From Ranitomeya imitator (lineage: Eukaryota): 64,000 nucleotides of DNA. Position numbers and translations under genes: made by a program. This document shows positions 9,737 to 49,068 of this stretch, piece by piece. Within the stretch, counting starts at the first letter, position 1. Each line of letters begins with the position of its first letter. The notes under the pieces were generated by a model. It saw only the letters and a program-made list of their open reading frames with translations, was not told the origin of the DNA and searched no databases. Location: contig NC_091285.1 of NCBI RefSeq assembly GCF_032444005.1, forward strand, positions 658,068,001 through 658,132,000, written 5' to 3'.

Positions 9737-10876
9737 TCTATAATATAACGCTGGGAGCATCACTCTGTCCGAAGCCTTTATAGACTGCGCAAGTGCAAGC
9801 GCCGGCGCAGTCTGGACCCCACAGAATGACGCTCCCGGGAGATTGCGGTATGCGTAAGCACTGAACGCACACCGCGATCTCCAACGGAGAGGCAGGGACG
9901 TGCCAGGAGGGTAAGTATAAGCTATATTCACCTGTCTGTCCCGTTCCAGCACTGCGCGCCGCCCCATCTTCCGGGTCCTCTGCCTGTGACGTTCACAGTT
10001 CAGAGGGCGCGATGACGCGCTTAATGCGCGCCGCCCTCTGACTGACCAGTCACAGCCAGAGGACCCGGAACACGGAGCGGCACGCAGCGCTGGAACGGGA
10101 CAAACAGGTGAATATAGCAAGTGTTGGGGGCCTGAGCTAGCGGCGATACCGGCACCTGACCCCCACAGCGCGCCGCTGTCCCCGCCTGCTCAGGCCCCCC
10201 AGCACTCGGCGCCCAGCGACGATAGGTGAGTATGTTATTTTTTTTTTTATATATATATATATATCGCAGCAGCATACGGGGCATATAATACAATGGAGCA
10301 TCTTATGGGGCCATAAATCTTTATGGAGCAGCATATGGGGCATATAGTATGGAGCATCTTATGGGGGCCATCAACCATAATGGAGCAGCATATGAGGCAT
10401 ATACTATGGAGCATTTTATGGGGCCATCAACCTTTATGGAGCAGCGTATGGGGCATATGGATGGGAGCAGCAAATTACAGAACGGGGGCGCAGGATGGGT
10501 GCAGCACATGACAGGATGGGGACGCAGGATGGCAGCAGCACATGACAGAACGGTGGCGCAGGATGGGAGCAGCACATGACAGGATGGGAGCAGCACATGA
10601 CAGAACGGGGGCGCAGGATGGCAGCAGCACATGACAGGATGGGAGCAGCACATGACAGAACGGGGGCGCAGGATGGCAGCAGCACATGACAGGATGGGAG
10701 CAGCACATGACAGAACGGGGGCACAGGATGGCAGCAGCACATGACAGGATGGGGGCGCAGGATGGAGCAGCACATGACAGGATGGGGACGCAGGATGGAG
10801 CAGCACATGACAGGATGGAGACCATATACCAATATAAATGCTCGCCACCCGGGCGTAGAACGGGTTCAATAGCTAG
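9737..10876 (+). mobile_element. Non-autonomous Helitron
   Basis: Inserted between A and T; 5' TCTATAATATAA; 3' hairpin ACCCG-GGCGTAGAA-CGGGT (10847-10865) followed by CTAG at 10873-10876; no TSD. Confidence 0.75.
10460..10820. repeat. Minisatellite of mixed 21- and 34-bp units (core GCAGCACATGACAG)
   Basis: Visible tandem units inside the Helitron; source of several spurious ORFs. Confidence 0.85.
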
Positions 10877-14800: not shown

Positions 14801-17800
14801 GTTCGCAGTCCGGGGTCCACCGTGCAGGTGAAAACTTGCTGCTAGTAAATGGCAGCGCTATATGGCGGTGGAAGCGAACCCTGTAAAGCCACTGGTCATC
14901 AATACCGCACTAATGAGTGCAAGCAAGGAGTCAGCTAACTCAATCCCAAGACTCAGGATTGAAGTCCGTTCAGACTACCTGCGCACAACACCGCAACTGT
15001 GTGTGTTAGGTAATTGATAGAAATAGTTAGAGCACCGAAGGGTGAACTGTGCCGTGCTGGCAGACACCACCAAGCACCCGGACGTGGGTTTAGGAAGCAC
15101 ATTACTGGCGCGTGGCGCCGCACTGGCGGTCACAGCTATGGACGCTGATTCGTGTGTAACACGTTGTGAGGATAATCGGGCACTAGAAAGCAGCCATACA
15201 CCTTACGCGAGCAGTCATTCAATAGGGAGGGTTTTTTAAAGGACGACTTGCACTCATCAACAAACACAAGTATACAATTGTACACTAGCGCATGGCCGTG
15301 CGGTCATGCGAAACTTATATAGCTGCAGCACGTTCAGGACCTTCCAATAAAGGGCCAATGGGAACCGCTGCAGCATCTGAGCATGTGACCCTCGATCTCC
15401 AACGGGAGATCTCACCCTGGGCATGCTCAGAAGGGAAAAAGCAGGACTTAGTCCCAAAAGCGTCCGCTCGCTGCTGCCCAGCACTGACTTTAATGGCAAA
15501 AGCTGGAAAAGCAACAGCAAGCCTAAGCACAGAGTGAGACTGAGCAAGACGTAAGGACCGACGTCTCTGCTGAGCAGGTTCCACTGCGGCAGGAGAAGAA
15601 TGGGAGACCGCAGCAGAAACGGCCTGAGATTCCCCCTGTGTAGAAGCGGGAACTCGACCCCCAACAGAGGGGCTCCAAAGAGTATGGCAATATATTCTAT
15701 CAAAAGATGGTAAATATACAGCTCAATTATAATATTGATTAAGTGCCTAGCGACCACAAATATTTCCGTCCATTCCATTCAATAGCAACAGTATATTATC
15801 AATAATATCTATGTGTCATAGCAACCAGGCAACCCCCACATGTACTTATGCTGGCTAACAGATGTAAATCATTCAGCTGCGTCAAAAAAAACTAAATCTC
15901 CGAGCACTAAAAAATACTCGGAGGACAACCGTGCGTGCTCGAGAAATCTCGAGTAACTAGTATATTCGCTCATCACTAGTCAGCACCTAACAGTAACCAA
16001 AAAAATCCATTTCAGAAAAAACTGCCACAAATCAGCAGGTGTCCCGAGCATTTGTGTTAGAAAAAATTAACTGATGTTGAACATAAAATGGAATTAAATG
16101 GTCTTTCTGGCTGTATAAAATCGGTAGTGTATAGCCAGATGCTTTTACAACTTTATCTCACAATCCCATCCAGGCCCTTTTGTGATTGTTGTTGTGACTG
16201 CCCTGATAATGGTGTTATATTAGTCAAAGTCCACCTGGTTCTCTCACTTTTCATGTCCTATAACTGTTCTTTTTCAGAAGGAATGTGTTCATACTTTAAG
16301 GAAAGACCGGTGATCATCACATACGGACTGCTGGCACTTTCATTTATCCTGGTTATTGTTCTCTTCATAGCTGTCCATTCTAAAAGTCAGTAACGTTTTT
16401 TGTTCATTCATTGTCATAGATTATCTGTAGTGTATTTATCTGTACGCTATCCAATGCCTGACTATGCTATTTGTGCATGAACCTCTCCACTTAGGTCATA
16501 TTCGACGTGTAACTCTAAAAATCTGGGCCACAAAGCAAAATATGTAACATGGAGACAGGGATTGTGTAGGTACGGGATCTGCGTCTGCACCATCCTCAAT
16601 ATTGTAGATGTCAGTCTTCTGCAATAACTGGGATTAGCGATAACTCTGATCCTGAGGAGAGAGGGAAACCTCCAATGCTACTGATTATTTTAGCTGTTGA
16701 ACCCCTAAGATGCCATTGTCACTAGTGATCGTGGCCTCTAGGTGGTTAGACAGAAGGAGGAGTCATCCTTCTCTTACCCATTTGCTCTGCTACAATTAAA
16801 TATTGGGGTGCCAATGGATTATTGTCTTGTAAACATAAAAAAAGCCTTTTTATGTTTGGATGTTGGTGGGCCCTGGGGTCAAGTAATTGTGTGTAGTCAG
16901 TGCCAAAATTTACCTGTAACATAAAGTAAAATGTGTCAGGATCAGGAAAAATCAATCTAAGAATCACTGGGATATGTTAAAGCATTCCAAAGTTATTACC
17001 ATATACAGTGCCACTAGTCAAAAATGAAAAATTTGGCCTGGTCAGGAAGGTGAAATTAGGCTTGGGGGTGAAGGGTTTAATTAACAGGTTAGAAAATTAA
17101 AGCAGTCGTCTGACCAGTTGTCAGGAGCCAATAATGTTATTATATTCTATTAATTTAATCTTCTTTACTAGATTCCCACCCAGAACATAAAGCTCTGGCC
17201 AGCAGGGACGACATGGTCAGCGTGAACATCACTGGTAAGATGCCATTGTCCTCCTGGGCTAATGTGTCCAGATACTGACCTTTTTCTTGTTTTAGTCATG
17301 CTTTTTTTTTTTTTCTGAAGATTTTTTTTTATCTTTTGTAAATCATTATGGAAGTAACGATTAAGCTGGAGTTGTTAGTGCAGTTAGGACTTTTGCTTGT
17401 GACTCTGTTGTGATTATTTGTGTCATATGTATACCCCTTGCTTGATATTTTTTTTCCACTTTTGAAGCCACTCCTCTACTGGAGAGACTTTATGTCTTTT
17501 TATTCGACTTTTGAAATTTCTATATGTTGATTAAAACTTATTTGCGTAGCGAACCACGCATAGGTTGCACCCCGCTTAAAAGGTGTCGAAAACAAAAGTG
17601 CGAAAAATAGCAGAGGGTTGCAATTTATTGGCAAGATTGATCTTTTATGTGCCAATGGACTGACACGAACGCATTGATTAATGCCTTTTTACTTTTACAA
17701 GAGAAAAACACATGCAAAAATTGAGTAAAATAAGTGACTCAACATGTTTTTTTACTTAACCACAAGATTTTGTTCATTTCCTCTTTTGCAGTTAATTCGC

Positions 17801-20800: not shown

Positions 20801-23800
20801 GCGCTTTCAGGCTGTCATCGGCTTCCAACGCTGCCTGAAGTCACTGATTAGAAGTGGCCAAAATAGATGAGATCACCACGTCTTCTGTCAGTTCCCCGGG
20901 GCCTCCATCTAACCCAGCAAGCAGCTACTTGGTCGGAAGGGAGGAAGCCATCTGACCCCCGAGTGGCCCTGGCATTATCAGTGCAAGTGACAGCAGCCAT
21001 GGCTGCTGCAACTGCAGGTAGTGCCCGCTTTCCTGCTGCTTCTGGCTAAGTCACCGGTCCAGACTGACTAACCTGGCCCTCTTGCATCCTGGTTGTGGAC
21101 GAACGCTAACAATCAATGCGCATTTTATGATATTTTCTTGTAAGGAGAAGATTGAGATCATTATCATTAAGTAGATCAAAAAAAGATTGTAGTTCCGACC
21201 AATGAAGTACCATGCCAAATCCAAGAAATATCATCAATGTAGCATGCCCAAAATATGACACTTAGTGATTCTAAAAGAAAAAGGTCTGTTTCCCACAGCC
21301 CTAGAGACAGGTTGGCATATGCCTGAGCACATGTTGCCCCCATAGCTGTACCCTAGAGATGTAGGAAATAGGCACCATTGAAGGTTAAAAAGTTATGGGA
21401 CAGGGTAAACACCAACAATTGAACCAGAAATTCCGCATGTGTTTGATCAAGATTTTCTATCTGTAGAAAATAGGAGACTGCTTGTAGGCCATCTTGATGT
21501 TTTATACATGTATACGAGGACTCGATGTCACAAGTAAATAATGTTGATGTATATACATATATTCTCCATTAAAGCACCCATCCCAGACACTATAGGCCTA
21601 CCTGGAGGTGTGATGGCCTTCTGTGAATTTTTGGAAGAAAATACAGAGTAGGGTCAACTGTATCTGGGAACATATAGAAGAGACCTGGGATCAGATTTTG
21701 GATGAGACATGCTTGAATCTGATGGAGAGCATGCCCAAAAGGATTCAAGCAGTGTTGAAAGTAGAGATGAGCAAATTTGATTGGGTTCCTGCTTATTTGG
21801 CAAGCTATAGAGTTTACCAAATAAGCTGCAGAGGGAACCCAGATACATGGAGTGCTCCAGCTGATCAGATGCTCCGATCCGCAGCTGCATGTGTCGCGGC
21901 TGTGTCACAGTCACAGCACATGCATGGAGAGCCTGTGTGTTGTGACTGTGACACAGCCGCAACACATGCAGCTGCGGAGCAGGACAGCTGATCAGCTGGT
22001 ACGCTCCATGTATCCGGCTTCCCTGTGCAGCTTATTTGGTACACACTATAGCTTGCCGAATAAGCAGGGACTTGATCAAATTCGCTCATCACTAGCTGAA
22101 AGTCAAAGGTGGATTAACAAATTAATAAAAAATAGATGATTGTCTATAAAATGATGGTAGTCTCATGTTCAAAGCTGTAGTGGATGGCAAGATATGGAGA
22201 CCGAATGTCAAAAGTCCAAAACATTGTTTGCCTTTCCCTCGTCAGTGTATAAAGGGGTTATAGGGACATTCATTAAGATGCATGTAAAGTGGTGAAATCA
22301 GCAGAAAAATGGAAAACCATCCTCAGCATAGCCCATCAAAATTAGATCTCACTTGACTTTTGGCATCCCCACCTTTCAAAGTTGCATAACTTGTTGGATC
22401 ACCATGACCCTTTCAAACTGTTAGACAGATATGATGAATTTGGGACCATCACCGATCTATTATCAATGGTACCAAGTTGTCTTAAATATAGACAGTTTAT
22501 TACTTCTTTCTTCCAAAAACAGCACTGCTTTTGTTCACAGGCCGTGTCTGGTATTGCAGTTCACTCCTATTCGCTTGAATGGAGTTGTGCTGTAAGACCA
22601 GAAACAACCCACTAACCGGTGTGACACTGCTTTTGAAAGAAAGCCTCTATTTTTACTAATTCTGTACAATCCCTGACAATATCACATTTTTTTAATTTCA
22701 GAGAAATACACCTGTGATGCTGGTTGGATTGTGTTTGACAGAAAATGCTACTTTTTTTCAAGCTCCAAATCTAACTGGTTTAAAGCCCGGTCCATGTGCG
22801 TACTCAAGAACTCTGATTTAGCTGTGATCAAGAACGAATATGAGCAGGTGAGATGTCAGTTATGAATATGATTGGCCTCATAACCCATCAGCTTGTCTAA
22901 ATAGACCTTCAAGGTATATACGGACCACAACGGAAAACATATATATTAATCTGTCATGCAAGCTCAAAACCAAGTGGGGGAGCGAAAAACAGAGAATTGG
23001 GGAAAAGGACACTCCAGCAAAGAAGCCTTATAACCCAATATAAAGAATGGAGTTCAAGTCTAATAATTAAAAGGGTAGAAATAATAATGCAAAAAGTACT
23101 AATAACCATTACAATTTCAGCGAGAAAAACCGGTGGAAAAGATCGGTGGGTATACTAGAGAGTACCACATATATTAAAAGGTAACGTGCAAAGTGCTTTG
23201 TTATAAAGAAGGAAAAGATAAGCAGGAGGAAGAGTAGTGAGTATAACTCAAACAGAATTGCCTACTAGCCTAGGGATCAGTGCCCTGTCACTATCATGAC
23301 CCCCCCCCCATGTCCTGGATATCTTACTCATGTTGTGGTATCCTCTGGCTCCCCACCGTGCAGCCCCAACGCACGTTTTCACATTGGCTTCATCAGGGGC
23401 TCAAATCTAACTGGTTAGAGCCGGTCCATGTGTGTACTCAAGAACTCTGATTTAGCTGTGATCAAGAACGAAAATGAGCAGGGAGATGTCAGTTATGAAT
23501 ATGATTGGCCTCATAACCCATCAGCAAGTCTAAATAGACCTTTAGTTGCATTAAAAATCTTGTTAATGGCTTGGACAATCATTTAAAGGGTAGTTACCTC
23601 CATTGAGACATCACAAAGCTTTGGAGTAGAGCTAATTTCTATAGGCTTTAAGGATGCTGCTCTCTTTTGGTTCTCTTCCTACCTTACTGAACAATCATTC
23701 CGTGTATCATTTAATTTCTCTTCTTCTCCTCTTTCCCATATGCCAGATTCATATGACCGCATTTCAATGCTTGGATTGACCACTGATCTCCCGACCCGGA

Positions 23801-26800
23801 TTTACGGCCATGTGTATGTTTATAAGTTCGAGATGGGAGTTCCGCGTTCAGTCCTGGAATTACAGTCCGGTCCATGTACAGTATATACTGTGAAACTTGT
23901 TGTGTGAACTTTTCCTTACTTTCGAGCTTTCACAGATATTGTTCCTAGCTCTTCTTCTCTTTTGTTTTATATTGCCCCATGGGAAAATTGTCAGCCCATT
24001 TGGCTTTCAGTGCCATCTCTTTACTGTGGACACCCTATTATACATTACAATATACTTCTCTTAACATCACCTTCATCAGCACTACAAAACACTAGTGATT
24101 GTCTGTCCTCTATCTCTAACATCATGTCCTTTCTCTGGCTGAACCTTCCAAAAATTGAACTTCTTGTATTTTCACCATCTACTAAGACACTTGTGGCCTA
24201 TCATCACCATCATAGGTGGGCACATTCCCATGTAACAGTAAAAAATGCAAAATTTGAACCTACATATTACCAACAAATACAGTCTAATACTGTCAGGGCT
24301 AGCGGAACACACCGAGAAAATAGAGTTGTTTATTATGAAAGGTGCGTTCGCAGCCCGGGGTCCACCGTGCAGGAGGAACATGCTGCTAGCGAATGGTGGC
24401 ACTGTTAGGCGGTATAGACTAGCTCTGTTACTCCACAGAGTAGCCGTGAAAGGGAAGCACTGCGCCCTGTGAGCCTCACAGGAGCACAAGCTTACTGCCA
24501 AGCTGATAGCAGTCAGTGGTTATGTAACATGCAATCTCCTCACCGGAGAAGCCGGTATTCTAGGGGCTTATTTCAGCCGGGTCCCTGAACACACTCATAC
24601 AATCTCCTCACCGGAGGTGCCGGTATTCTAGGGGCTTATTTCAGCCGGGTCCCTGAACACACTCATACATAACCTCACTGGCGCAAAGCACATATATGAA
24701 TTGATACTAGCGCATGGCCGTGCGGCCAAGCGAGCCTTAAATAGCTGCAGCACGTTTAGGACCTTTCAAATAAGGACCAATGGAGAGCTGCAGCACCTGA
24801 GCATGTGACCCCATATCTCCACTGAGAGATCTTGCCCTGAGCATGCTCAGAGTGCAAAGCAGGATTTAGTCCTAGTACCTACAAGGACCTTAGCTGCAGT
24901 ATCTGATCATGTGACCCTTGATCTCCACTGAGAGATCTTACTCTGGGCATGCTCAGAATGTGAAAAGCAAGACAGCCCCAGAAGCGTCCGCTCGCCGCTG
25001 CCCAGCACTGACTTCAATGGCAGAAGCAGGAAATGCAGCAGTAACTCTTAGCACAGAGTCAGACTGAGCGAGACGCTGGGATCGACGTCTCCGCTGAGCA
25101 GGCTCCACTGCGGCAGGAGAAGAATGGGAGACCGCAGCAGAGATGGCTCGAGATTCCCCCTGTGCAGAGGCAGGAACTCAACCCCTAACATTACCCCCCT
25201 CCTAGGGCCCCCCCTCCTTGGGCCTCACTACGTTCGAAGGCAGCAATGAGCTGCGGAGCCCGAATGTGCTCAGCAGGCTCCCAGGACCTGTCCTCAGGAC
25301 CATAACCCTTCCAGTCCACCAAATAAAATTTTTTGCCATGTACCACCTTGCACCCCAAAATAGCGTTTACCTCATAATCGTCCATAGACAAATCCGATGT
25401 CCCAGCAGATGACTCAGAAAACCGGGACATATACATGGGTTTCAAGAGGGACACATGGAAGGTGTCGGTGATACCCAGGCGTGGCGTAAGGGCCAAACGA
25501 TAGACCACAGGATTAACCTGTTCGAGGACCTTGAAGGGGCCCAAGTAGCGAGGAGCAAACTTAGTGGACTCAACTCGCAGCCTGATGTTACGGGCAGAGA
25601 GCCACACCAAGTCGCCAGGAGCAAAGGTCGGAGCGGGGCGCTGATGTGCATCAGTGGAGGACCTCATTCTCTCCTTGGAGGCCCGAATGGCATCCTGAGT
25701 GCGGTCCCAAATATCCCGTGCCTCCACAGCCCAGTCTGACACCCTGAAGTCGGCGGAAGAAACGGGCATAGGCACAGGTACCCGTGGATGCTGACCATAG
25801 TTGAGGAGGAATGGGGTTTGTCCAGTGGAGTCGGCTACGGCGTTGTTCAGTGCAAACTCTGCCCACGATAGCAAGGATGCCCAGTCATCCAGCCTGGCTG
25901 AAACAAAATGTCGCAGGTATGTGACCAAGGTCTGGTTGGCCCTCTCTACCAACCCATTCGTCTCGGGATGATATGCGGAAGAGAGATTCAACTCAATGCT
26001 GAGAAGACAACAAAGCTCTCTCCAGAACTGAGACGCAAACTGGGGACCCCGGTCACTGACAATTTTGTATGGCATACCATGTAGGCGGAAGATGTGTTTT
26101 ATGAACAACGCTGCCAAGGCCCGTGCAGAAGGTAACCGTGGTAGCGGCACCAAATGCACCATTTTTGAGAAATGATCGGTGATGACCCAAATGATGGTAC
26201 AGCCGCGAGACTTGGGTAAACCCACAACAAAGTCCATCCCGACCATCTCCCAGGGCCTATCTGCCACCGGCAAGGGATAGAGTAACCCAGCTGGCCTTTG
26301 ACGAGGAGATTTATTTTTGGCGCAGGAGACACACGCCTGAATATAATCTCTGACATCCCGGACCATATGTGGCCACCAGTACATCCTCACTAGCAGCTCA
26401 GATGTCCTCTTTGTCCCAAAGTGTCCACCCACCGTGGACGAATAAGCCCAAGAGAGAACCTCCGGTCACAAATTAATGGGCACAAAAGTCTTGCCCAGAG
26501 GCACAGACTCTAGCGAAACCGGCGCTACGGTTCTCAGGCTCTCTGAAGGGACAATAAGCCGAGGCTCCCCCTCCTCCTCCTCAGATGACATACCAGAGCG
26601 AGAGAGAGCGTCTGCACGAATGTTCTTCTCCCCAGCGAGATAATGAAGGGTGAAGTGGAACCGGGAGAAGAACAAGGACCATCTGGCCTGGCGAGAATTT
26701 AGCCTCTGGGCTGTCTGCAGGTATAACAAATTTTTGTGGTCCGTGAAGACTTGAAAGGGAAAATGAGCCCCCTCCAAGAGATGTCTCCATTCCGAGAAAG

Positions 26801-29800
26801 CCAGCTTCATCGCTAGCAACTCCCTGTTCCCAATGGAATAATTCCTCTCCGCAGGTGTGAAGGTCTTGGAGAAGAAGAAGCACGGATGCTTCCGACCTTG
26901 AGCATCCTTTTGGAAGAGGACTGCTCCTGCACCAACGGAAGAGGCATCCACCTCCATTATGAACGGCTTATCAACATCGGGACGATGTAGGATGGGAGCG
27001 CTAGCAAAACGGGACTTAATAGAAGAAAAGGCCCTGGAGACCTCTTCAGACCACAATTTGGGATTTGCTCCCTTCTTGGTGAGGGCTACCAAGGGAGCTA
27101 CCAAAGTTGATAAGTGGGGAATGAACTGGCGGTAATAATTAATGAACCCCATAAAGCGCTGCACCGCTTTAACAGAATGGGGTTCTTGCCAGTCCATCAC
27201 AGCCTGTAATTTGGCAGGATCCATAGCTAATCCCTGGGCGGAGATGATATAGCCCAGGAAAGGTAAAGACTCCTGCTCAAACATACACTTCTCCAACTTT
27301 GCGTGGAGAGAATTTGCCCGTAAGAGGTCGAAGACTCTGCCAACATCTCTCCGGTGGGAGTCAATATCTGGAGAAAAGATGAGAATAACATCCAGATAGA
27401 CTACGACCGAGGTGGAAAGCATATCCCGGAAAATGTCGTTGACAAAATCTTGGAAAACGGCTGGGGCATTGCAGAGCCCGAAGCGCATCACCAGATACTC
27501 ATAGTGCCCATCTCTGGTGTTAAACGCCGTCTTCCATTCGTCCCCCTCACGGATGCGAATCAGGTTATAAGCACCCCGCAGATCTAATTTGGTAAATACC
27601 TTAGCTCCCCTTAGCCTATCAAAAAGCTCAGAAATCAGGGGCAGCGGGTACTTATTCTTAACGGTGATGGCGTTAAGACCCCTGTAATCTATGCAAGGAT
27701 GTAATTCTCCATTCTTCTTCTGCACGAAGAAGAACCCTACCCCTGCTGGTGACACTGACTTCCTAATGAACCCTCTTGCCAAATTTTCCTGGATGTATTG
27801 GGACATAGTCTTTGGTGAGAGAAGAGAGATCTGCGGGTAACTCAGTGGTGGAAACCTGAACGCACTCTTTCACACATCTGCCCTTACAGGATTCACTCCA
27901 ACCCAATATCCTCCCAGAGGACCACTCAATATGTGGGGAGTGGAAACGGAGCCAGGGTATTCCCAGCAGAATCTCATCCATTCCCTCGGGAAGGACAAGA
28001 AGGGAAACTATCTCCTTGTGGGATGGGGACATAGCTAACGTGAAAGGGACAGTCTGGTGTGTGATCTGAGATGGAAGTGTTGACCCGTTCACTACTCTAA
28101 CAGTCACCGGTTTGGCGAGCATCCCCAGAGGTATTGCATGGCGCAGAGCAAAAGCCGAGGACATGAAATTCCCCTCAGCTCCGGAGTCCACACAAAGTTC
28201 GACTGTTAGAGAGTAAGATCTTAATATGATTGTCCCCTTGAATGACAGCTTGGAGGAAAATGCCGCTGTGTCTAGATAACCTCCTCCAACGGTTACTAGA
28301 CGTGATTGTTTACCCAACCGCCGTGGACATTTATTGGCATAATGTCCCTCTTGTTGGCAATTTCTGCAAACTATGGGTACTCGAGCAGTCCGAGACTTAG
28401 GTCCCACTCGAGAAACCTCCATGGCCTAATGGGAGTCGGACGCCTGAACGGAAGATTCTAGAGGTCTGGCGAAGGTGGGAGCCAGCCGAAACCTCTGCCT
28501 ACACTGGGCCCGCTCCAACCTCCGCTCGTTAAAACGGAGGCCAATGCGGGTAGATATAGAAATAAGCTCCTCCAGTGTGGCGGGAATCTCCCTGGTGGCC
28601 AAGGCGTCCTTCACATGGTCTGCCAGTCCTCTCCAGAACACCGGAATAAGGACTTTATCCGGCCACTCCAGCTCCAAGACCAGAGTCCAGAATTGGACGG
28701 CGAACTGGCTGACCATGGACGAACCCTGGGTTGTTGCCAACAATTGGAGTGCGGTATCATGGGTGACACGAGGTCCCAAAAAGACCTGTTTCAGAGTGTC
28801 CAGGAAGAGAGGAGCACTCTGCACCACACGATCATTGAAGACACAAAAGAGAATAGTGAAACCAAAAACACTCAGTTTGAAAAAATGTTGCAGTAATCCG
28901 CAAGTGCTAGTAAAAGATGTAAAAAACAGGGTATTTGGTTGATACGTTTTTTGCAAAAAATGTATACTAAGCTGCTCTACCAATCTTCACGGTATACCCT
29001 TATCAGAGCAGTCCTAACTAATGTATGCAATCCCTATCTGATGTATTTAAAAACCTGATCATCTGTATATAACCTGTGTGAACAGGGTTCAGAGAGGAAA
29101 AATCCATGTGTGCATACAGGGTAGAACAGCTTTTGTGCAGATAGCCCAAGAGGAGTGGTGGAACTCCCCAGTCTTGTAGACACAAGAGAACAATTATGGA
29201 AACAGGAACACATGGGCTACTTGCACAGTGAACAAGTCTGTATGATCATGTTCACACACCACCAAGAAACCTGAAGACACAAAAGAGAATAGTGAAACCA
29301 AAAACACTCAGTTTGAAAAAATGTTGCAGTAATCCGCAAGTGCTAGTAAAAGATGTAAAAAACAGGGTATTTGGTTGATACGTTTTTTGCAAAAAATGTA
29401 TACTAAGCTGCTCTACCAATCTTCACGGTATACCCTTATCAGAGCAGTCCTAACTAATGTATGCAATCCCTATCTGATGTATTTAAAAACCTGATCATCT
29501 GTATATAACCTGTGTGAACAGGGTTCAGAGAGGAAAAATCCATGTGTGCATACAGGGTAGAACAGCTTTTGTGCAGATAGCCCAAGAGGAGTGGTGGAAC
29601 TCCCCAGTCTTGTAGACACAAGAGAACAATTATGGAAACAGGAACACATGGGCTACTTGCACAGTGAACAAGTCTGTATGATCATGTTCACACACCACCA
29701 AGAAACCTGAAGACACAAAAGAGAATAGTGAAACCAAAAACACTCAGTTTGAAAAAATGTTGCAGTAATCCGCAAGTGCTAGTAAAAGATGTAAAAAACA

Positions 29801-32800
29801 GGGTATTTGGTTGATACGTTTTTTGCAAAAAATGTATACTAAGCTGCTCTACCAATCTTCACGGTATACCCTTATCAGAGCAGTCCTAACTAATGTATGC
29901 AATCCCTATCTGATGTATTTAAAAACCTGATCATCTGTATATAACCTGTGTGAACAGGGTTCAGAGAGGAAAAATCCATGTGTGCATACAGGGTAGAACA
30001 GCTTTTGTGCAGATAGCCCAAGAGGAGTGGTGGAACTCCCCAGTCTTGTAGACACAAGAGAACAATTATGGAAACAGGAACACATGGGCTACTTGCACAG
30101 TGAACAAGTCTGTATGATCATGTTCACACACCACCAAGAAACCTGAAGACACAAAAGAGAATAGTGAAACCAAAAACACTCAGTTTGAAAAAATGTTGCA
30201 GTAATCCGCAAGTGCTAGTAAAAGATGTAAAAAACAGGGTATTTGGTTGATACGTTTTTTGCAAAAAATGTATACTAAGCTGCTCTACCAATCTTCACGG
30301 TATACCCTTATCAGAGCAGTCCTAACTAATGTATGCAATCCCTATCTGATGTATTTAAAAACCTGATCATCTGTATATAACCTGTGTGAACAGGGTTCAG
30401 AGAGGAAAAATCCATGTGTGCATACAGGGTAGAACAGCTTTTGTGCAGATAGCCCAAGAGGAGTGGTGGAACTCCCCAGTCTTGTAGACACAAGAGAACA
30501 ATTATGGAAACAGGAACACATGGGCTACTTGCACAGTGAACAAGTCTGTATGATCATGTTCACACACCACCAAGAAACCTGAAGACACAAAAGAGAATAG
30601 TGAAACCAAAAACACTCAGTTTGAAAAAATGTTGCAGTAATCCGCAAGTGCTAGTAAAAGATGTAAAAAACAGGGTATTTGGTTGATACGTTTTTTGCAA
30701 AAAATGTATACTAAGCTGCTCTACCAATCTTCACGGTATACCCTTATCAGAGCAGTCCTAACTAATGTATGCAATCCCTATCTGATGTATTTAAAAACCT
30801 GATCATCTGTATATAACCTGTGTGAACAGGGTTCAGAGAGGAAAAATCCATGTGTGCATACAGGGTAGAACAGCTTTTGTGCAGATAGCCCAAGAGGAGT
30901 GGTGGAACTCCCCAGTCTTGTAGACACAAGAGAACAATTATGGAAACAGGAACACATGGGCTACTTGCACAGTGAACAAGTCTGTATGATCATGTTCACA
31001 CACCACCAAGAAACCTGAAGACACAAAAGAGAATAGTGAAACCAAAAACACTCAGTTTGAAAAAATGTTGCAGTAATCCGCAAGTGCTAGTAAAAGATGT
31101 AAAAAACAGGGTATTTGGTTGATACGTTTTTTGCAAAAAATGTATACTAAGCTGCTCTACCAATCTTCACGGTGTACCCTTATCAGAGCAGTCCTAACTA
31201 ATGTATGCAATCCCTATCTGATGTATTTAAAAACCTGATCATCTGTATATAACCTGTGTGAACAGGGTTCAGAGAGGAAAAATCCATGTGTGCATACAGG
31301 GTAGAACAGCTTTTGTGCAGATAGCCCAAGAGGAGTGGTGGAACTCCCCAGTCTTGTAGACACAAGAGAACAATTATGGAAACAGGAACACATGGGCTAC
31401 TTGCACAGTGAACAAGTCTGTATGATCATGTTCACACACCACCAAGAAACCTGAAGACACAAAAGAGAATAGTGAAACCAAAAACACTCAGTTTGAAAAA
31501 ATGTTGCAGTAATCCGCAAGTGCTAGTAAAAGATGTAAAAAACAGGGTATTTGGTTGATACGTTTTTTGCAAAAAATGTATACTAAGCTGCTCTACCAAT
31601 CTTCACGGTATAACCTTATCAGAGCAGTCCTAACTAATGTATGCAATCCCTATCTGATGTATTTAAAAACCTGATCATCTGTATATAACCTGTGTGAACA
31701 GGGTTCAGAGAGGAAAAATCCATGTGTGCATACAGGGTAGAACAGCTTTTGTGCAGATAGCCCAAGAGGAGTGGTGGAACTCCCCAGTCTTGTAGACACA
31801 AGAGAACAATTATGGAAACAGGAACACATGGGCTACTTGCACAGTGAACAAGTCTGTATGATCATGTTCACACACCACCAAGAAACCTGAAGACACAAAA
31901 GAGAATAGTGAAACCAAAAACACTCAGTTTGAAAAAATGTTGCAGTAATCCGCAAGTGCTAGTAAAAGATGTAAAAAACAGGGTATTTGGTTGATACGTT
32001 TTTTGCAAAAAATGTATACTAAGCTGCTCTACCAATCTTCACGGTATACCCTTATCAGAGCAGTCCTAACTAATGTATGCAATCCCTATCTGATGTATTT
32101 AAAAACCTGATCATCTGTATATAACCTGTGTGAACAGGGTTCAGAGAGGAAAGATCCATGTGTGCATACAGGGTAGAACAGCTTTTGTGCAGATAGCCCA
32201 AGAGGAGTGGTGGAACTCCCCAGTCTTGTAGACACAAGAGAACAATTATGGAAACAGGAACACATGGGCTACTTGCACAGTGAACAAGTCTGTATGATCA
32301 TGTTCACACACCACCAAGAAACCTGAAGACACAAAAGAGAATAGTGAAACCAAAAACACTCAGTTTGAAAAAATGTTGCAGTAATCCGCAAGTGCTAGTA
32401 AAAGATGTAAAAAACAGGGTATTTGGTTGATACGTTTTTTGCAAAAAATGTATACTAAGCTGCTCTACCAATCTTCACGGTATACCCTTATCAGAGCAGT
32501 CCTAACTAATGTATGCAATCCCTATCTGATGTATTTAAAAACCTGATCATCTGTATATAACCTGTGTGAACAGGGTTCAGAGAGGAAAAATCCATGTGTG
32601 CATACAGGGTAGAACAGCTTTTGTGCAGATAGCCCAAGAGGAGTGGTGGAACTCCCCAGTCTTGTAGACACAAGAGAACAATTATGGAAACAGGAACACA
32701 TGGGCTACTTGCACAGTGAACAAGTCTGTATGATCATGTTCACACACCACCAAGAAACCTGAAGACACAAAAGAGAATAGTGAAACCAAAAACACTCAGT

Positions 32801-35800
32801 TCATTGCGCTCCCATAGCGGCGTTGCCCACTCCAACGCCCTGCCCGACAAAAGGGATAAAATAAATCCCACTTTTGCCCGTTCCGTAGGAAAACGTGCAG
32901 CCAGAAGCTCAAGATGTATGGAGCACTGACTCACGAATCCCCGACATTGCTTACTGTCACCAGCAAACTTGTCTGGAAGCGGGAGACGGGATGAAGTCAG
33001 AGCAGGGGTGGCAGAGGACAAACTGGCTGCAGCTACACTTGCAGCCTGAACAGCGACTGCGGTAACATCCACAGCTGAGGTTGTGCGCTCGAGAGCCGCC
33101 AACCTACCCTCCAGCTGCTGGATGTACCGCTGTAAACACTGACCGTCCGCCATTTACTAGCCAGACCCTGGCGCTAGTATACTGTTAGGGCTAGCGGAAC
33201 GTACCGAGAAAATAGAGATGTTTATTATGAAAGGTGCGTTCGCAGCCCGGGGTCCACCGTGCAGGAGGAACCTGCTGCTAGCCAATGGCGGCACTGTTAG
33301 GCGGTATAGGCTAGTTCTGTTACTCCACAGAGTAGCCATGAAAGGGAAGCCCTGCGCCCTGTGAGCCTCACAGGAGCACAAGCTTACTGCCAAGCTGATA
33401 GCAGTCAGTAGTTATGTAACATGCAATCTCCTCACCGGAGAAGACGGTATTCTAGGGGCTTATTTCAGCCGGGTCCCTGAACACACTCATACAATCTCCT
33501 CACCGGAGGTGCCGGTATTCTAGGGGCTTATTTCAGCCGGGTCCCTGAACACACTCATACATAACCACACTGGCGCAAAACACATATATGAATTGATACT
33601 AGCGCATGGCCGTGCGGCCATGCGAGCCTTAAATAGCTGCAGCACGTTTAGGACCTTTCAAAGAAGGACCAATGGAGAGCTGCAGCACCTGAGCATGTGA
33701 CCCCAGATCTCCACTGAGAGATCTTGCCCTGGGCATGCTCAGAGTGCAAAGCAGGATTTAGTCCTAGCACCTACAAGGACCTTAGCTGCAGTATCTGATC
33801 ATGTGACCCTTGATCTCCACTGAGAGATCTTACTCTGGTCATGCTCAGAATGTGAAAAGCAGGACTTAGCCCCAGAAGCGTCCGCTCGCCGCTGCCCAGC
33901 ACTGACTTCAATGGCAGAAGCAGGAAATGCAGCAGTAACTCTTAGCACAGAGTGAGACTGAGCGAGACGCTGGGATCGACGTCTCCGCTGAGCAGGCTCC
34001 ACTGCGGCAGGAGAAGAATGGGAGACTGCAGCAGAGATGGCCCGAGATTCCCCCTGTGCAGAGGCAGGAACTCGACCCCTAACATATACCAAACACAAAT
34101 CAGGACTATAAGATCATGGATTACTTTTCATGTACAACTTCCAATGTGGGGTACAATGTGCAAGGTGCTCTGGAGGTACTATATCTATATTGAGGAAATC
34201 CTGCTTTGAGCAGGGGGTTGGACCAGATGACCCAGGAGGTCCCTTCCAACTCTACCATTCTATGATTCTATGAAACGATGCAAAAACTACAACCGAGGAT
34301 GACACAGACAAATAACCGGGAATGAACTGGACATGCCAATGGGAAAACATTTCTCTGGACCTGGAGACTTGCAAGAAATACACACGCATTTTTTTCATTT
34401 CAGCCCATTGAGCCATTAAATTAATTGGGGAAAAGCAGTGAGAAATGTTAAGCCATACCCATGTCATACGGATGTCATAGGCATGTCATACGGATACTTA
34501 GATGCGAGGAAATCGCATTATCGCAATGCAAACGGATTACACATGGCTGACCATATGGAGAACTTTTGTGCCACTATCGGCTGAGAGAATCGGACCGATT
34601 TTTCATACGTTAAGTGTGACACTTATATCAAATATAACAGGATGGCAACCTTGTTTGCTCCCATTTGCATAAAGTTATCATTGGCAGTATGTGCGGAGGA
34701 AAGTCTCATACTGTTTCATTATTCTCGGCAGCACATCCTCTTGAAACTGGATGATGAGTTGCTGATAACGAATATTTTAATACCCACATAAAAGACGTGG
34801 TAAAGCAACAAACACCCATTTCATTTGTCCTTTACTCAGACACACTTATACATAGGACAATGATACGGGAGGATCACTGATGGTTGAACCCTTCCTCTTT
34901 GCTTCTAGGTGTCTCCTTTCTCAAGCGGTAGATAGGAGGTAGCAAAACTCCATGCTTTTTGCCCCGAGTGACAAATATCAACACCGTAATTGGAGGCCCA
35001 TGTAGATCTTTAGTAGGTGTGAAATTTGCTTGTATACAATGTTATGTGGTATTTCCTGCAGGTTATCGTGGTGGTACCATTGTATAGAATTGTTATTTAG
35101 AACACGGTATGTCAGTGTTATTTATTGCCATTGAATGCGAAGTTACACTACTTGGAACAATTAGTTACTGAATGATCTAGTGATTTATATGCTAACGTAA
35201 CAGATGGAGAGACCAGCCCATAATGCTTCTGTATCTCAACATAAAAAATACATAGAAGTGATAAACTTTGTAACATCCCTGAACTTTCTGTAATATCCAG
35301 ACTTTGCAAAACTGTTTTTAGTCCATTTTATACAGTCTCGCCTCGGAAGTCTATGAAAAAAAGGTTTATTCTTTAGTTTCTTTATTTGCCCCCCACAGAG
35401 ATTTATTGGTGCAAAAACAGGTGATAGAGCTTATTGGATTGGTCTAACTGACAATGAGGCGGAAGGAAACTGGACATGGGTCGATGGAACAGACTACAAA
35501 TCATCATATAAGTAAGTTTTGTAACTCCCTGATTATCTATGGTTATATGGTGTAGTGCAGCGGTGCTCACCATGTGCAGTGATGAGGCAGTGACCTAGGA
35601 AAGCTACAAAGTAAATGTAATTTAATGTTCCGTATACTCACAAACAAAGCAACAAAAAAAACCGTCCATGTGAGTCTGGCTGCCGAGGGCAACTGCACCA
35701 CTGTATCATGCTTCGGAGTGCCAGGAGTTTGCTCAGCTGGCTCTCTGGTAACTCACATAGGCTGTGCTTCTGCAGAGCCATCTGCTCTGCAAGTTGCAAA

Positions 35801-42342: not shown

Positions 42343-45300
42343 TGTTGTGAATTCTGTGGCTGAATTCACTCCTGTGGTCACAAGTGGTACTGCAGCTTCT
42401 GAGCTTCCTCCCTCAGGTGTTCTGGTGAGCTCGTTGGCTGCTTTGTTATTTAACTCCGCCTGATTCTGTCTTCCTTGCTCCTTGTCAATGTTCCAGTGTT
42501 GGATCTGAGCTTCTGGATCTTTCCTGTGGCCTGCTGCTCTGCTTAGATAAGTGCTTCTTTGCTTTTGTTGTTACTTTTTCTGTCCAGCTTGTCAATTCGT
42601 TTTGCTGGAAGCTCTGAGACGCAAAGGGTGTACCGCCGTGCCGTTAGTTCGGCACGGTGGGTCTTTTTGCCCCCTTTGCGTGGTTTTTTGCTTTAGGGTT
42701 TTTTGTAGACTGCAAAGTTCTCTTTGCTATCCTCGCTCTATCTAGAATATCGGGCCTCACTTTGCTGAATCTATTTCATCCCTACGTTTGTCTTTTCATC
42801 TTGCTAACAGTCATTATATGTGGGGGGCTGCCTTTTCCTTTGGGGTATTTCTCTGAGGCAAGTCAGGCTTGCATTTCTATCTTTAGGCTAGTCAGCTCCT
42901 CAGGCTGTGCCGAGTTGCATAGGTAGTGTTAGGCGCAATCCACAGCTGCCTTTAGTTGTGTTTAGGATAGGTTCAGGTATTGCGGTCTACAGAGATTCCA
43001 CGTCTCAGAGCTCGTTCTATTGTTTTTGGGTTATTGTCAGATCACTGTATGTGCTCTGATTGCTGGCACACTGTGTCATTGGATTGCCTACATAACAGTA
43101 CAAGGAGCCCACCTAATGATTCTCAATAGAGGGAAAAAAGAAGTTCTGACATCATTTTTTTTCTCAGCTCTGTGTTCAGTCTTTTTGTTCCCCTAGACAT
43201 TTGGGTGTTTCAGGACACAGGTGTGGACATGGATATTCAGGGTCTGTGCTCTTCAATGGATAATCTCGTTACAAATGTACAAAGGATTCAAGATACTATT
43301 GATCAGAAATCTATGTTAGAACCAAGAATTCCTATTCCTGATTTGTTTTTTGGTGATAGAACTAAGTTTCTAAATTTCAAAAATAATTGTAAGCTATTTC
43401 TGGCCTTGAAACCTCATTCTTCTGGTAATCCTATTCAACAGGTTTTGATTATTATTTCTTTTTTGCGCGGCGACCCTCAGGACTGGGCATTTTCTCTTGC
43501 GCCAGGAGACCCTGCATTGAGTAATGTCAATGCGTTTTTCCTGGCGCTCGGATTACTTTACGATGAGCCTAATTCAGTGGATCAGGCTGAGAAAAATTTG
43601 CTGGCTTTGTGCCAGGGTCAGGATGATATAGAAGTATATTGTCAGAAATTTAGGAAGTTGTCAGTACTCACTCTGTGGAATGAATCTGCGCTGGCAGCTT
43701 TGTTCAGAAAGGGTCTCTCTGAGGCTCTTAAGGATGTCATGGTGGGTTTTCCTATGCCTGCTGGTTTGAATGAGTCTATGTCTTTGGCCATTCAGATCGG
43801 TCGACGCTTGCGCGAGCGTAAATCTGTGCACCATTTGGCGGTATTGTCTAAGATTAAACCTGAGCCTATGCAGTGCGATAGGACTATGACCAGAGTTGAA
43901 CGGCAAGAACACAGACGTCTGAATGGTCTGTGTTTCTACTGTGGTGATTCCACTCATGCTATTTCTGATTGTCCTAAGCGCACTAAGCGGTTCGATAGGT
44001 CTGCCGTCATTGGTACTGTACAATCCAAATTCCTTCTGTCCATTACCTTGATATGCTCTTTGTCATCGTATTCTGTCATGGCGTTTGTGGATTCAGGCGC
44101 TGCCCTGAATCTGATGGATTTGGATTATGCTAAACGTTGTGGGTTCTTCTTGGAGCCTTTGCGGTGTCCTATTCCGTTGAGAGGAATTGATGCTACACCT
44201 TTGGCCAAGAATAAACCTCAGTACTGGACCCAGCTGACCATGTGCATGGCTCCTGCACATCAGGAAGTTATTCGCTTTCTGGTGCTACATAATCTGCATG
44301 ATGTGGTCGTGTTGGGGTTGCCATGGCTGCAAACCCATAATCCAGTATTGGATTGGAACTGTATGTCGGTATCCAGCTGGGGTTGTCAGGGGGTACATGG
44401 TGATGTTCCATTTTTGTCTATTTCGTCATCCACTCCTTCTGAGGTCCCAGAGTTCTTGTCTGATTATCAGGATGTATTTGAAGAGCCCAAGTCCGATGCC
44501 CTACCTCCGCATAGGGATTGTGATTGTGCTATCAATTTGATTCCTGGTAGTAAATTCCCTAAAGGTCGATTATTTAATTTATCCGTGCCTGAACACGCCG
44601 CTATGCGCAGTTATGTGAATGAATCCCTGGGGAAGGGACATATTCGCCCATCATCATCACCACTGGGAGCAGGGTTCTTTTTTGTAGCCAAGAAGGATGG
44701 TTCGCTGAGACCGTGTATTGATTACCGCCTTCTTAATAAGATCACTGTTAAATTTCAGTATCCCTTGCCATTGTTATCTGACTTGTTTGCTCGGATTAAG
44801 GGGGCTAGTTGGTTCACTAAGATAGATCTTCGTGGTGCGTATAATCTGGTGAGAATCAGGCAAGGAGATGAATGGAAAACTGCATTTAATACGCCCGAGG
44901 GTCATTTTGAGTATCTAGTGATGCCGTTCGGACTTGCCAATGCTCCATCTGTGTTTCAGTCTTTTATGCATGACATCTTCCGTGAGTATCTGGATAAATT
45001 CCTGATTGTTTACTTGGATGACATTTTGATCTTCTCAGATGATTGGGATTCTCATGTGAAGCAGGTCAGAATGGTTTTCCAGGTCCTGCGTGCTAATTCT
45101 TTGTTTGTGAAGGGATCAAAGTGTCTCTTCGGTGTGCAGAAAGTTTCATTTTTGGGGTTCATCTTTTCCCCTTCTACTATCGAGATGGATCCGGTTAAGG
45201 TCCAAGCCATCCAGGATTGGACTCAGCCGACATCTCTGAAAAGTCTGCAAAAATTCCTGGGCTTTGCTAATTTTTATCGTTGCTTCATCTGTAATTTTTC

Positions 45301-48044: not shown

Positions 48045-49068
48045 GGCCAGTTATAGACGAATAGTCCACTCTTTTAATCACCATACTTCCAAGACATCCA
48101 AGGAAAATGAGAACCACGTACCAAAGTGAAACAACTACTGTACCTAAATAATAAAAAAAGAATATGAATAAATTAAAAACAGCAAAAGATGCCATGGCAG
48201 GTACAAAGAGTGCAGCAGGTGGTGATCACAGAAAGGGTGCAAAGTTGAGGCTCTCATTAAGGCCATGTAGATGGACTATATCAAGTGTCCAAATCCACCA
48301 TGCCTCTAACTGTGCCAGTCATTGGAAGATTTTCCCACCACAGATTTCCAAATCGATGGCATCAATGCCCTTGACTCGTAGGCCATTACCCTCACAGTTA
48401 TGATACAACTTAAAGTGTCTAGGTATCGTTTTTTATAGCGCTGCATCCTCCTGATTCGTTGCCGCCTGAATGCCAAGTACGTGCTCCCTAAGAAAGAAAG
48501 AAAAAGAATGGACTAAAACAGGCCTGCACAACCATATAGAAAAATGATAACAAAATACGTTTATTAAACACCACAAAAAACAACATAAAAACACTTAAAA
48601 TTACAACAATGTGTAAACACCCCAATCTACACCAATAAATATGCAGCGATAAATACAGGGTATGTACCCACAGACTATCTAGAGTGAAAGAAACCACATG
48701 CTAGCACGCTGGAGAATGTCATGGACAAAAGGAGCCCCACAATGTCTAATTATAATATAATACAATCAAAGACGTATAGAGTGAAAGCTCCTAGAGATAT
48801 ATCTAAATTCAAAGATGATGGACAAAGCACATCAAAATGAGGCACATAGCATGTGGATAGCAAAATGTAGCCAAAGTGGAATATAGTCTTAAACACATAG
48901 ATCAAAGCTCTCCTTTAAGAAATAAAGATGGCATGGTACGAAATAAATACCTCGCTGATTCTAAAATAAGATGGAATGAGACCAGGAGAGCCAGAGAGCT
49001 AAAATAATGCTGCAAAACTGCATGTCGTGAGTAACCAAAGGTAATGAGGAGGGAGTGTAGGAACAGAG

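What the first reader, a model, noticed from the sequence alone, without database searches (positions are those of the whole stretch)
28838..32800. Nine-mer of a 436-bp non-coding unit inserted with a target duplication into gag: candidate rolling-circle or retrozyme-like Penelope parasite
Seen: exactly 9 x 436 bp plus a ~40-bp overhang of the same unit; TCATTG duplicated on both sides; removing the array restores gag W-E-R-N-D-R-V-V-Q. I saw only three substitutions (31174, 31613, 32153), whereas the host LTRs differ at about 11 of their first 180 positions, so the array is far younger than its host. The unit has no ORF and is rich in hairpins and palindromes (TTTTTTGCAAAAAA, GGTATACC, TCTTGT-AGAC-ACAAGA, TGAACA...TGTTCA). 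It shares TGGTTGATAC with the Penelope-type palindrome at 2939-2949 and has an A-rich ACACTC end like other PLE ends here. Known: retrozymes and newt satellite 2 are tandem small-RNA repeats, and PLE insertions often form tandem pLTR repeats. Inference: a small, possibly circular, RNA was reverse-transcribed through several rounds and inserted as one multimer, probably by a PLE RT/endonuclease. The alternative is a monomer with ~40-bp terminal repeats later amplified by unequal exchange.
Basis: partly seen in the sequence, partly recalled or inferred. Interest (0 to 1): 0.78.

Follow-up and report, generated by a model that had tools for sequence, protein, structure and literature searches.

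The report
Ribozyme-free tandem retroelement in frog Gypsy
Nine near-identical copies of a very abundant 436-letter non-coding frog repeat were pasted in one event into a dead Gypsy jumping gene, most likely by Penelope-type reverse transcription; the repeat has no self-cutting RNA motif, and the scan has already met the same family elsewhere in this genome.

Summary
The array is 9 x 436 bp plus 39-42 bp, with three single-unit substitutions. TCATTG stands on both sides, and the array splits gag of a minus-strand Ty3/Gypsy chromovirus.

- No hammerhead or other Rfam ribozyme is present, and nothing shows an RNA circle.
- The claimed sequence links to Penelope elements in the window are chance.
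- The unit is not a rare private parasite. Contigs of four coded frog organisms hold it as a tandem repeat with a 99.8-100% identical consensus, at 2-5 times the depth of the already abundant host Gypsy.

A one-event, multi-unit insertion is still the best reading.
- The target duplication is real: paralogous Gypsy copies carry the site once.
- The length is not a whole number of units.
- Both ends fall in the most A+C-rich 45 nt of the unit.
- The 39-42-nt overhang has the size of the Penelope "tail".
- The target contains ATT.

This matches published Penelope-type priming. I read it as a ribozyme-free, non-autonomous tandem retroelement (confidence 0.6).

The scan has noted this before on other DNA of this genome: three 436/437-bp multimers that I take, unchecked, for the same family (s1-279618, s1-288107, s1-271797). 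It is a new variant of a known kind, of moderate interest.

The parts
28838..32800 (+). Inserted block between the two target-site copies: 9 units of 436 bp plus 39 bp (TRF limits 28836-32801)
28832..28837 (.). Left copy of the target-site duplication TCATTG (its last two bases TG also fit the unit)
   Evidence: paralogous uninterrupted gag contigs
32801..32806 (.). Right copy of the target-site duplication TCATTG (its first base T also fits the unit)
32744..32801 (+). Last copy of the A+C-rich segment (unit phases 421-436 and 1-42), which holds both phases at which the insert begins and ends. The final 39-42 nt are the overhang ('tail').
   Evidence: A+C 0.78 in the best 45-nt windows, against a unit mean of 0.55 (sd 0.085)
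28947..28960 (.). First copy of the palindrome T6GCA6 (unit phases 112-125), a T6 run on both strands, repeated in every unit
31174..31174 (+). Private substitution A>G in unit 6 (phase 159, inside GGTATACC)
31613..31613 (+). Private substitution C>A in unit 7 (phase 162, inside GGTATACC)
32153..32153 (+). Private substitution A>G in unit 8 (phase 266)
24291..34084 (-). Host: Ty3/Gypsy chromovirus-type LTR retrotransposon, flanked by ATAC on both sides
33183..34084 (-). Host 5' LTR (TG...CA, 902 bp)
24291..25190 (-). Host 3' LTR (900 bp; K2P 0.0295 to the 5' LTR)
32806..33153 (-). Host gag, piece upstream of the array (DUF4939 match)
28429..28833 (-). Host gag, piece downstream of the array (weak Retrotrans_gag match)
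25194..28422 (-). Host pol in three open stretches: zinc knuckle and protease, RT and RNase H, integrase with SH3 and chromodomain

Best explanation
The block is one young insertion of a high-copy, protein-free, ribozyme-free tandem retroelement with a 436-bp unit.

Proposed mechanism (inferred):
1. A multi-unit RNA of the A-rich (+) sense was copied by target-primed reverse transcription.
2. The bottom strand of the gag target was nicked at the left edge of TCATTG.
3. cDNA synthesis began inside the RNA, in its A+C-rich segment (phase about 40-42).
4. Synthesis ran back through nine units.
5. The cDNA was joined to the top strand at phase 1-3 through a 2-nt microhomology (TG). The top strand was cut at or just after ATT, six bases away, which gives the TCATTG duplication.

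The enzyme was most likely supplied in trans by an endonuclease-bearing Penelope-like element. That class starts reverse transcription at internal sites in an AC-rich region, leaves a 30-40-bp 'tail' and lays down head-to-tail copies.

Shown here: the anatomy, the real target duplication, the age gap, the absence of known ribozymes, and the abundance in several species.

Inferred: the RNA intermediate, its sense, and the Penelope-type enzyme.
For: 1. One event with a true target duplication. TCATTG flanks the block. Paralogous Gypsy copies in runs X5, X18 and X20 carry the site once and continue straight into 32807. The gag pieces abut.

2. All units are of one age. There are three substitutions in 3924 bp, all private to one unit and none shared by neighbours. 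That is about 5% of the per-lineage divergence of the host LTRs.

3. The length is 9 units plus 39-42 bp. This is not what opening a circular DNA multimer would give. Only 3% of possible phases give an overhang of 30-42 bp.

4. Both ends lie in the A+C-richest 45-nt window of the circular unit: 0.78 against a mean of 0.55, sd 0.085.

5. Published Penelope-type behaviour fits. Partial tandems, multicopy head-to-tail insertions of non-autonomous relatives and a 30-40-bp tail at one end are described in PMC8557442. Cleavage at 5'-ATT-3', reverse transcription starting at two nearby internal sites in an AC-rich stem-loop, and a tail equal to the stretch between them are described in PMC11167929. 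The target here contains ATT.

6. The family is large and homogeneous. Runs of four coded organisms hold the whole unit as a tandem repeat: a 'goes back 436' joint in all four, and a 466-nt circular contig in X20. Main contigs are 99.8-100% identical, at 2-5 times the summed depth of the host Gypsy gag.

7. Leads only, not checked by me. Scan notes report other TSD-flanked 436/437-bp multimers in this genome, some with inverted arms or a flipped piece and a 16-bp duplication. I assume they are this family from the matching unit length.
Against: - No Penelope-like element was identified in this window. There is no hammerhead at E <= 1, and no GIY-YIG domain in the ORFs tested. The RT fragment at 57361-58020 stays unclassified.
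- The unit shares no sequence with anything else in the window, so dependence on a given autonomous element is not shown.
- The A+C-rich segment does not fold into a stable stem-loop (-1.9 kcal/mol).
- This locus has no inverted arm.
- ATT in a 6-bp target and a 39-42-nt overhang are each weak and were noticed after the fact.
- No RNA run is on record as holding the unit.
- Only one locus could be read here, so fixed end phases across loci are untested.
Confidence: 0.6

Rival explanations
1. DNA-level capture of satellite DNA. A linear concatemer of the abundant 436-bp satellite was ligated into a staggered double-strand break in gag by end joining. The concatemer would come from rolling-circle replication of an extrachromosomal circle, or be a broken-out piece of an array. 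Fill-in of the stagger gave the short duplication.
For: The unit behaves as an abundant tandem satellite in four organisms. The junctions carry 1-2 nt microhomologies, as in end joining. No ribozyme, no poly(A) and no RNA evidence were found. From my own knowledge, extrachromosomal circles of tandem repeats are well documented in frogs and flies.
Against: Both ends fall within one 42-nt A+C-rich segment, and the overhang has the tail size. A random break would not explain that. A simple circle would give a whole number of units. A piece of an old array would usually carry shared variants between neighbouring units, and none are seen. Scan notes of inverted arms and 16-bp duplications at what look like sister loci fit two-strand priming better (unchecked).
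Confidence: 0.17
2. A 436-nt circular RNA, as in retrozymes, was reverse-transcribed round and round and inserted as a multimer.
For: The units are identical and the length is just over nine turns. HHR-bearing retrozyme arrays exist in the same genome according to scan notes. Published models have tandem cDNA made on circular retrozyme RNA (PMC7229834).
Against: No hammerhead, HDV-like, twister, pistol, hatchet or hairpin ribozyme reaches E <= 10 over 3.4 units on both strands. The single CUGANGA lacks a usable helix II and G12. The fold z-scores are only -2.0 and -1.9, so the RNA is not rod-like. A multi-unit linear transcript of a homogeneous array explains the same data without a circle.
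Confidence: 0.1
3. A single unit with 39-42-bp terminal direct repeats was inserted, and later grew to nine units in place by unequal exchange or replication slippage.
For: The overhang would provide the homology needed for a first unequal exchange. Tandem arrays do expand in place.
Against: Stepwise growth over time should leave variants shared by neighbouring units, but all three substitutions are private. Several apparent sister loci of about 4 kb with 9-10 identical units are noted in the same genome (unchecked). That would require the same expansion repeatedly.
Confidence: 0.07
4. The number of units is an assembly artefact: expansion or collapse of a repeat.
For: Only k-mer contigs were on offer, and these collapse the array. 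The count of nine was therefore not checked against reads.
Against: Three unit-specific substitutions order units 6, 7 and 8. Both junctions are clean. A 4-kb array is short for long-read assemblies (my own knowledge).
Confidence: 0.04

Closest known systems
Animal non-LTR retrozymes (PMC7229834; bioRxiv 10.64898/2026.07.22.740005), including newt satellite 2
   Same: Protein-free units of a few hundred bp. Head-to-tail multimers dispersed in the genome. Low G+C. Target duplications longer than 4 bp. High copy number. Proposed mobilisation by Penelope-like elements.
   Different: Each retrozyme unit carries a type I hammerhead ribozyme and yields circular RNA. This unit has no detectable ribozyme, and nothing shows a circle. 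At 436 bp the unit is slightly above the published 170-400 nt range.
Non-autonomous Penelope-like elements that insert as multicopy head-to-tail arrays, such as MRC1 and non-autonomous Chlamys of Chlamydomonas (PMC8557442)
   Same: No ORF, no canonical hammerhead, pseudo-LTRs or multicopy tandem insertions, recent activity.
   Different: Those share their 3' end with an identified autonomous family. Here no autonomous partner was identified. They are from green algae, not vertebrates.
Poseidon-type element PAc of Anolis carolinensis (PMC11167929)
   Same: Cleavage at ATT-containing AT-rich DNA. cDNA start at internal sites in an AC-rich RNA segment. A 30-40-nt tail between two start sites. Tandem genomic copies.
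   Different: PAc is autonomous, carries a hammerhead, and its start sites sit in a stem-loop. Here the segment is A+C-rich but does not fold stably, and the start sites are inferred from one locus.
Dispersed satellite blocks seeded from extrachromosomal circles (my own knowledge, not tested here)
   Same: An abundant tandem repeat appearing as a short new block in a euchromatic or transposon context with microhomology at the junctions.
   Different: Such insertions have no reason to begin and end in one short motif or to carry a tail-sized overhang.

Membership tests
Animal non-LTR retrozyme | Type I hammerhead ribozyme in every unit | tested here: not met
   No hammerhead hit at E <= 10 over 3.4 units on both strands, none at gathering score or at E <= 1 in the whole window. 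The one CUGANGA at the unit junction has no valid helix II or G12.
Animal non-LTR retrozyme | Head-to-tail multimers of a non-coding unit, without LTR, PBS or PPT | tested here: met
   9.1 x 436 bp; longest stop-free stretch 75 codons
Animal non-LTR retrozyme | Abundant circular RNA of unit length | not testable with these tools
   No holder is on record as RNA. Contigs cannot tell a circle from a tandem transcript.
Penelope-type (PLE-dependent) insertion | Partial tandem or multicopy head-to-tail layout | tested here: met
   feature as described in PMC8557442
Penelope-type (PLE-dependent) insertion | Extension ('tail') of 30-40 bp at one end | tested here: met
   The overhang is 39-42 bp beyond nine whole units. 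About 3% of phases would give 30-42 bp by chance.
Penelope-type (PLE-dependent) insertion | cDNA start inside an AC-rich RNA segment; AT-rich or ATT target | tested here: inconclusive
   Both ends lie in the A+C-richest window and the target TCATTG holds ATT. But this is one locus only, there is no stable stem-loop, and both points were noticed after the fact.
Penelope-type (PLE-dependent) insertion | Adjacent inverted 5'-truncated copy (frequent, not obligatory) | tested here: not met
   No inverted unit sequence at either junction. Scan notes report inverted arms at what look like sister loci (unchecked).
Penelope-type (PLE-dependent) insertion | Sequence shared with the pLTR or 3' end of an autonomous PLE of the same genome | not testable with these tools
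   There is no repeat library and no access to the rest of the genome. Within the window nothing resembles the unit and no PLE was identified.
Satellite DNA | High-copy tandem repeat shared by related species | tested here: met
   Whole unit held by 19-20 runs of 10 studies and four coded organisms. The tandem joint occurs in all four runs laid, with main contigs 99.8-100% identical.
Satellite DNA | Long heterochromatic arrays as the main form | not tested
   Contigs collapse arrays, and the rest of the genome could not be read.
Helitron-type rolling-circle DNA transposon | 5'-TC and CTRR-3' ends, insertion between A and T, no target duplication | tested here: not met
   The ends read AAGACAC... 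and ...CACTCAGT, with a 3-6-bp duplication.
Integrase-mediated insertion | Insert ends 5'-TG...CA-3' with a fixed 4-6-bp duplication | tested here: not met
   With TG as the first bases, the last CA lies 3 bp inside the right end, which leaves no duplication.
Ty3/Gypsy chromovirus (the host element) | LTRs with TG...CA, and gag, protease, RT, RNase H, integrase and chromodomain in that order | tested here: met

The most novel reading that the evidence does not exclude
The 436-nt unit is processed and circularised without any known ribozyme, either by an undescribed self-cleaving motif or by a host nuclease and ligase. The insert is then a rolling-circle cDNA of that circle. This frog lineage would then hold a second, ribozyme-independent class of circular-RNA retroelements beside its hammerhead retrozymes.
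Probability: 0.1. Interest if true: 0.8.

Novelty: new variant of a known kind. Interest (0 to 1): 0.45.

Why it matters
Retrozymes have been defined by their hammerhead ribozyme, and their tandem insertions have been explained by circular RNA templates. This family has the same insertion anatomy but no ribozyme, and it appears active in several poison-frog-type genomes.

If that holds, the tandem layout comes from the Penelope-type copying machinery rather than from the ribozyme or a circle. Such elements would also be a direct source of new satellite-like arrays in giant amphibian genomes.

The locus is a clean case for that argument. It has an exact empty site in paralogues, a datable host, and both ends in one motif. 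The value is tempered because the scan has already noted apparently sister loci with the same reading, and because the enzyme link remains inferred.

Tried and rejected
**Ribozymes.**
- Rfam at E <= 10 on 3.4 units, at gathering score on the window and at E <= 1 on the window gave no ribozyme, tRNA or snRNA-like hit.
- The manual hammerhead core search found one CUGAAGA at the unit junction. I rejected it for lack of a valid helix II and G12.

**Copies and relatives of the unit.**
- There is no other copy or relative of the unit, or of its end motifs, in the window.
- The claimed link to 2939-2949 is chance. That site sits beside a long hairpin that gets only sub-threshold miRNA-like hits.
- Exact-pattern scans of metagenome contigs (twice) and viral contigs found nothing.
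- The unit's small ORFs are not in the protein collection.

**Looking for a Penelope-like element in the window.**
- No GIY-YIG domain was found.
- The RT fragment at 57361-58020 had no PDB relative and an uninformative Atlas result.

**Reads.**
- I did not send the whole array to read laying, because that tool turns away long repeats. I laid one permuted unit plus the right flank instead.
- All runs on offer were contigs. The copy count of nine, presence/absence alleles, RNA ends and strand could therefore not be tested.
- I first read 'million letters' as run size and computed copy numbers. I rejected this because the figure counts contig letters. Only relative depth is used.

**Other mechanisms.** Helitron-type and integrase-mediated insertion were rejected on the end sequences.

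**Weak observation.** GAACA occurs six times in the unit, but this does not survive correction for all 5-mers.


Full report
**1. The observation.**

Tandem Repeats Finder reports one array at 28836-32801 with period 436, 9.1 copies, 99% matches and no indels. Cutting the array into units shows nine full units. They differ only at 31174 (A>G), 31613 (C>A) and 32153 (A>G), each change private to one unit. A partial tenth unit follows.

The hexamer TCATTG stands at 28832-28837 and again at 32801-32806. The insert between the two copies, 28838-32800, is 3963 bp, that is 9 x 436 + 39. The TG of the left copy and the T of the right copy also fit the unit. The overhang is therefore 39-42 bp, and the strictly certain duplication is 3-6 bp.

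The unit has no stop-free stretch above 75 codons.

**2. The host.**

The array lies in a minus-strand LTR retrotransposon at 24291-34084. Its LTRs are TG...CA, 900 and 902 bp long, with ATAC on both outer sides.

Its open stretches match gag, zinc knuckle and protease, RT and RNase H, and integrase with SH3 and chromodomain. It is therefore a Ty3/Gypsy chromovirus-type element. It is decayed: pol is in three separate open stretches. I only describe these breaks.

The gag pieces on either side of the array align to residues 47-109 and 113-217 of the gag of the other, intact Gypsy in the window. They therefore abut within one residue.

**3. The target duplication is real.**

I laid contigs of four public runs on one permuted unit plus the right flank (32366-33300). 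Contigs of paralogous Gypsy copies in X5, X18 and X20 reach 32807 from the left with the uninterrupted gag sequence. That sequence matches the window's left flank up to the duplicated hexamer, which they carry once (loose ends before 32807).

So the site is single in sister copies and double here.

**4. Age.**

The host LTRs differ by 26 substitutions in 900 aligned positions (K2P 0.0295, about 0.015 per lineage). The units differ from their common sequence at 3 of 3924 positions, or 0.00076.

If all three changes arose after insertion, the array is about one twentieth of the age of its host. None of the three is shared by neighbouring units. This fits units of one age better than stepwise growth in place.

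**5. What the unit is not.**

Rfam gives no hammerhead, HDV-like, twister, pistol, hatchet or hairpin ribozyme, and no tRNA or snRNA-like head. This holds at E <= 10 over 3.4 units on both strands, at gathering score for the window, and at E <= 1 for the window.

The only CUGANGA in a dimer spans the unit junction. It has no acceptable helix II or G12, and about 0.4 such matches are expected by chance.

The RNA folds are about 2 sd better than shuffles on either strand, so the RNA is not rod-like.

The unit's ends fit neither a Helitron nor an integrase product.

The best match of the unit anywhere else in the window is 15-20 nt at E of 1 to 3.4. The end motifs occur only in the array. I could identify no Penelope-like element in the window.

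**6. What the unit is.**

The run search was made with 436 bp of left flank plus 565 bp of array. Nineteen runs hold half or more of the sampled words. Most hold 0.55-0.57, which is the share made up by the unit. They come from ten studies and four coded organisms, and include very small contig sets.

In the four runs laid (organisms A to D):
- The joint 'goes back 436' is present in every run.
- X20 has a 466-nt contig that closes on itself after 436 nt.
- The main contigs of X5 and X18 are identical to the window's unit, and that of X20 differs at one base.
- In X5, X18 and X20 the unit's depth is 2-5 times the summed depth of all copies of the host Gypsy gag that are at least 85% alike. That Gypsy is itself highly repeated.

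Diverged subfamilies also exist, among them a variant with a 13-bp deletion.

The figure 'million letters' counts contig letters, so I give no absolute copy number.

The unit is thus an abundant, homogeneous tandem repeat family of a group of related frogs. Scan notes call the genome poison-frog-like.

**7. How it went in.**

Three features of the anatomy speak for copying rather than for cut-and-paste of existing DNA.
- The length is not a whole number of units, which a linearised circular multimer would give.
- Both ends fall inside one short segment. The 45-nt windows that start at phases 421-428 are the most A+C-rich of the circular unit (0.78 against a mean of 0.55, sd 0.085). They contain both the start phase (1-3) and the end phase (40-42).
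- The overhang of 39-42 nt has the size of the 30-40-bp 'tail' that marks insertions of Penelope-like elements (PMC8557442).

For an Anolis Poseidon element, the tail was shown in vitro to be the stretch between two internal start sites of reverse transcription. Those sites lie in an AC-rich stem-loop, and priming follows cleavage at 5'-ATT-3' (PMC11167929). The target here, TCATTG, contains ATT.

Non-autonomous Penelope-type elements without hammerheads that insert as multicopy head-to-tail arrays are described in green algae (PMC8557442).

My model has four steps:
1. A multi-unit RNA of the A-rich sense serves as template.
2. The bottom strand is nicked at the left edge of the hexamer.
3. 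cDNA starts at phase about 40-42 and runs through nine units.
4. The cDNA joins the top strand at phase 1-3 over the TG microhomology.

The RNA, its sense and the enzyme are inferred. The anatomy is shown.

**8. Limits of that reading.**

- It rests on one locus.
- The A+C-rich segment does not form a stable hairpin.
- ATT and the overhang size were noticed after the fact.
- No autonomous partner was found.
- No run is on record as RNA.

The main rival is DNA-level capture of a satellite concatemer at a staggered break. It explains the microhomologies and the abundance, but not the position of both ends. In-place growth from a monomer and an assembly error are minor rivals.

**9. Earlier notes of this scan (leads that I could not check).**

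The same genome is said to hold hammerhead retrozyme arrays with units of 353 and 384 bp.

It is also said to hold other multimers with a 436/437-bp unit, which I take for this family on unit length alone:
- a 9.3-mer with a duplicated target and a short flipped piece (s1-279618);
- ten copies in two inverted arms (s1-288107);
- a 5.2-mer with an inverted cap and a 16-bp duplication in a Gypsy integrase (s1-271797).

Ribozyme-free families of about 500 and 525 bp are noted as well. Follow-up agents read these as ribozyme-free Penelope-style insertions, and I reuse that reading. It raised my odds for the retro-type model from about 0.5 to 0.6.

If the notes are right, variable duplications (6 and 16 bp) and inverted arms add weight to two-strand target priming. 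Three of the four loci are about 4.0-4.3 kb long, which may reflect template length or enzyme processivity.

**10. Verdict.**

- The element fails the defining test of a retrozyme (no hammerhead) but works like one in its insertion anatomy.
- It is best filed as a ribozyme-free, presumably Penelope-dependent tandem retroelement that doubles as an abundant satellite.

This is a new variant of a known kind, already met by this scan elsewhere in the genome. Interest is moderate.

**Tools.**

Raw reads were not on offer. I did not send the whole array to read laying, because that tool turns away long repeats.

Noticed in passing
window 31174 and 31613: Two of the three substitutions in the array hit the same 8-bp palindrome GGTATACC (unit phases 159 and 162) in adjacent units. 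This may be a mutational hot spot or copying errors at a hairpin.
   Followed up: no
window 42343-48045: A second, very young and apparently intact Ty3/Gypsy chromovirus of another family. Its LTRs are 99.3% identical (42343-43098 and 47290-48045) and it has one 1412-aa gag-pol ORF at 43172-47410.
   Followed up: partly
window 2959-3055 and 21864-21992: Two long hairpins that get sub-threshold miRNA-precursor hits on both strands (E down to 1.5e-09, below gathering score), probably fold-back MITE-like repeats. There is no hammerhead there.
   Followed up: no
window 4954-6776: A decayed tandem array with a period of about 393 bp and 77-83% identity between copies. Further tandem blocks lie at 10268-10818 and 12763-13376. 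A scan note mentions a 390-bp satellite carried by TTAA transposons in this genome.
   Followed up: no
window 15262-15666: A fragment 82-87% identical to the inner part of the host Gypsy LTRs, so a solo or truncated LTR of a related family.
   Followed up: no
window 33420-33561 and 33678-33877 (and the same in 24528-24972): The host LTRs carry internal tandem duplications of 68 bp (2.1 copies) and 106 bp (1.9 copies).
   Followed up: no
window 57361-58020 (-): A 219-aa reverse-transcriptase fragment (RVT_1, E = 3.6e-09) that I could not assign to a LINE or Penelope type. No GIY-YIG domain was found nearby.
   Followed up: partly
unit phases 245-418 (e.g. window 29080-29253): GAACA occurs six times (five forward, one reverse) in the second half of the unit, against 0 of 2000 shuffles. 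The motif was chosen after the fact and does not survive correction for all 5-mers.
   Followed up: partly
runs X1, X5, X18 laid on window 32366-32801: The family has diverged subfamilies in the same organisms. One variant lacks 13 bp just after the A+C-rich segment (joint 'goes back 423'). X18 holds a more distant version of phases 43-72.
   Followed up: no
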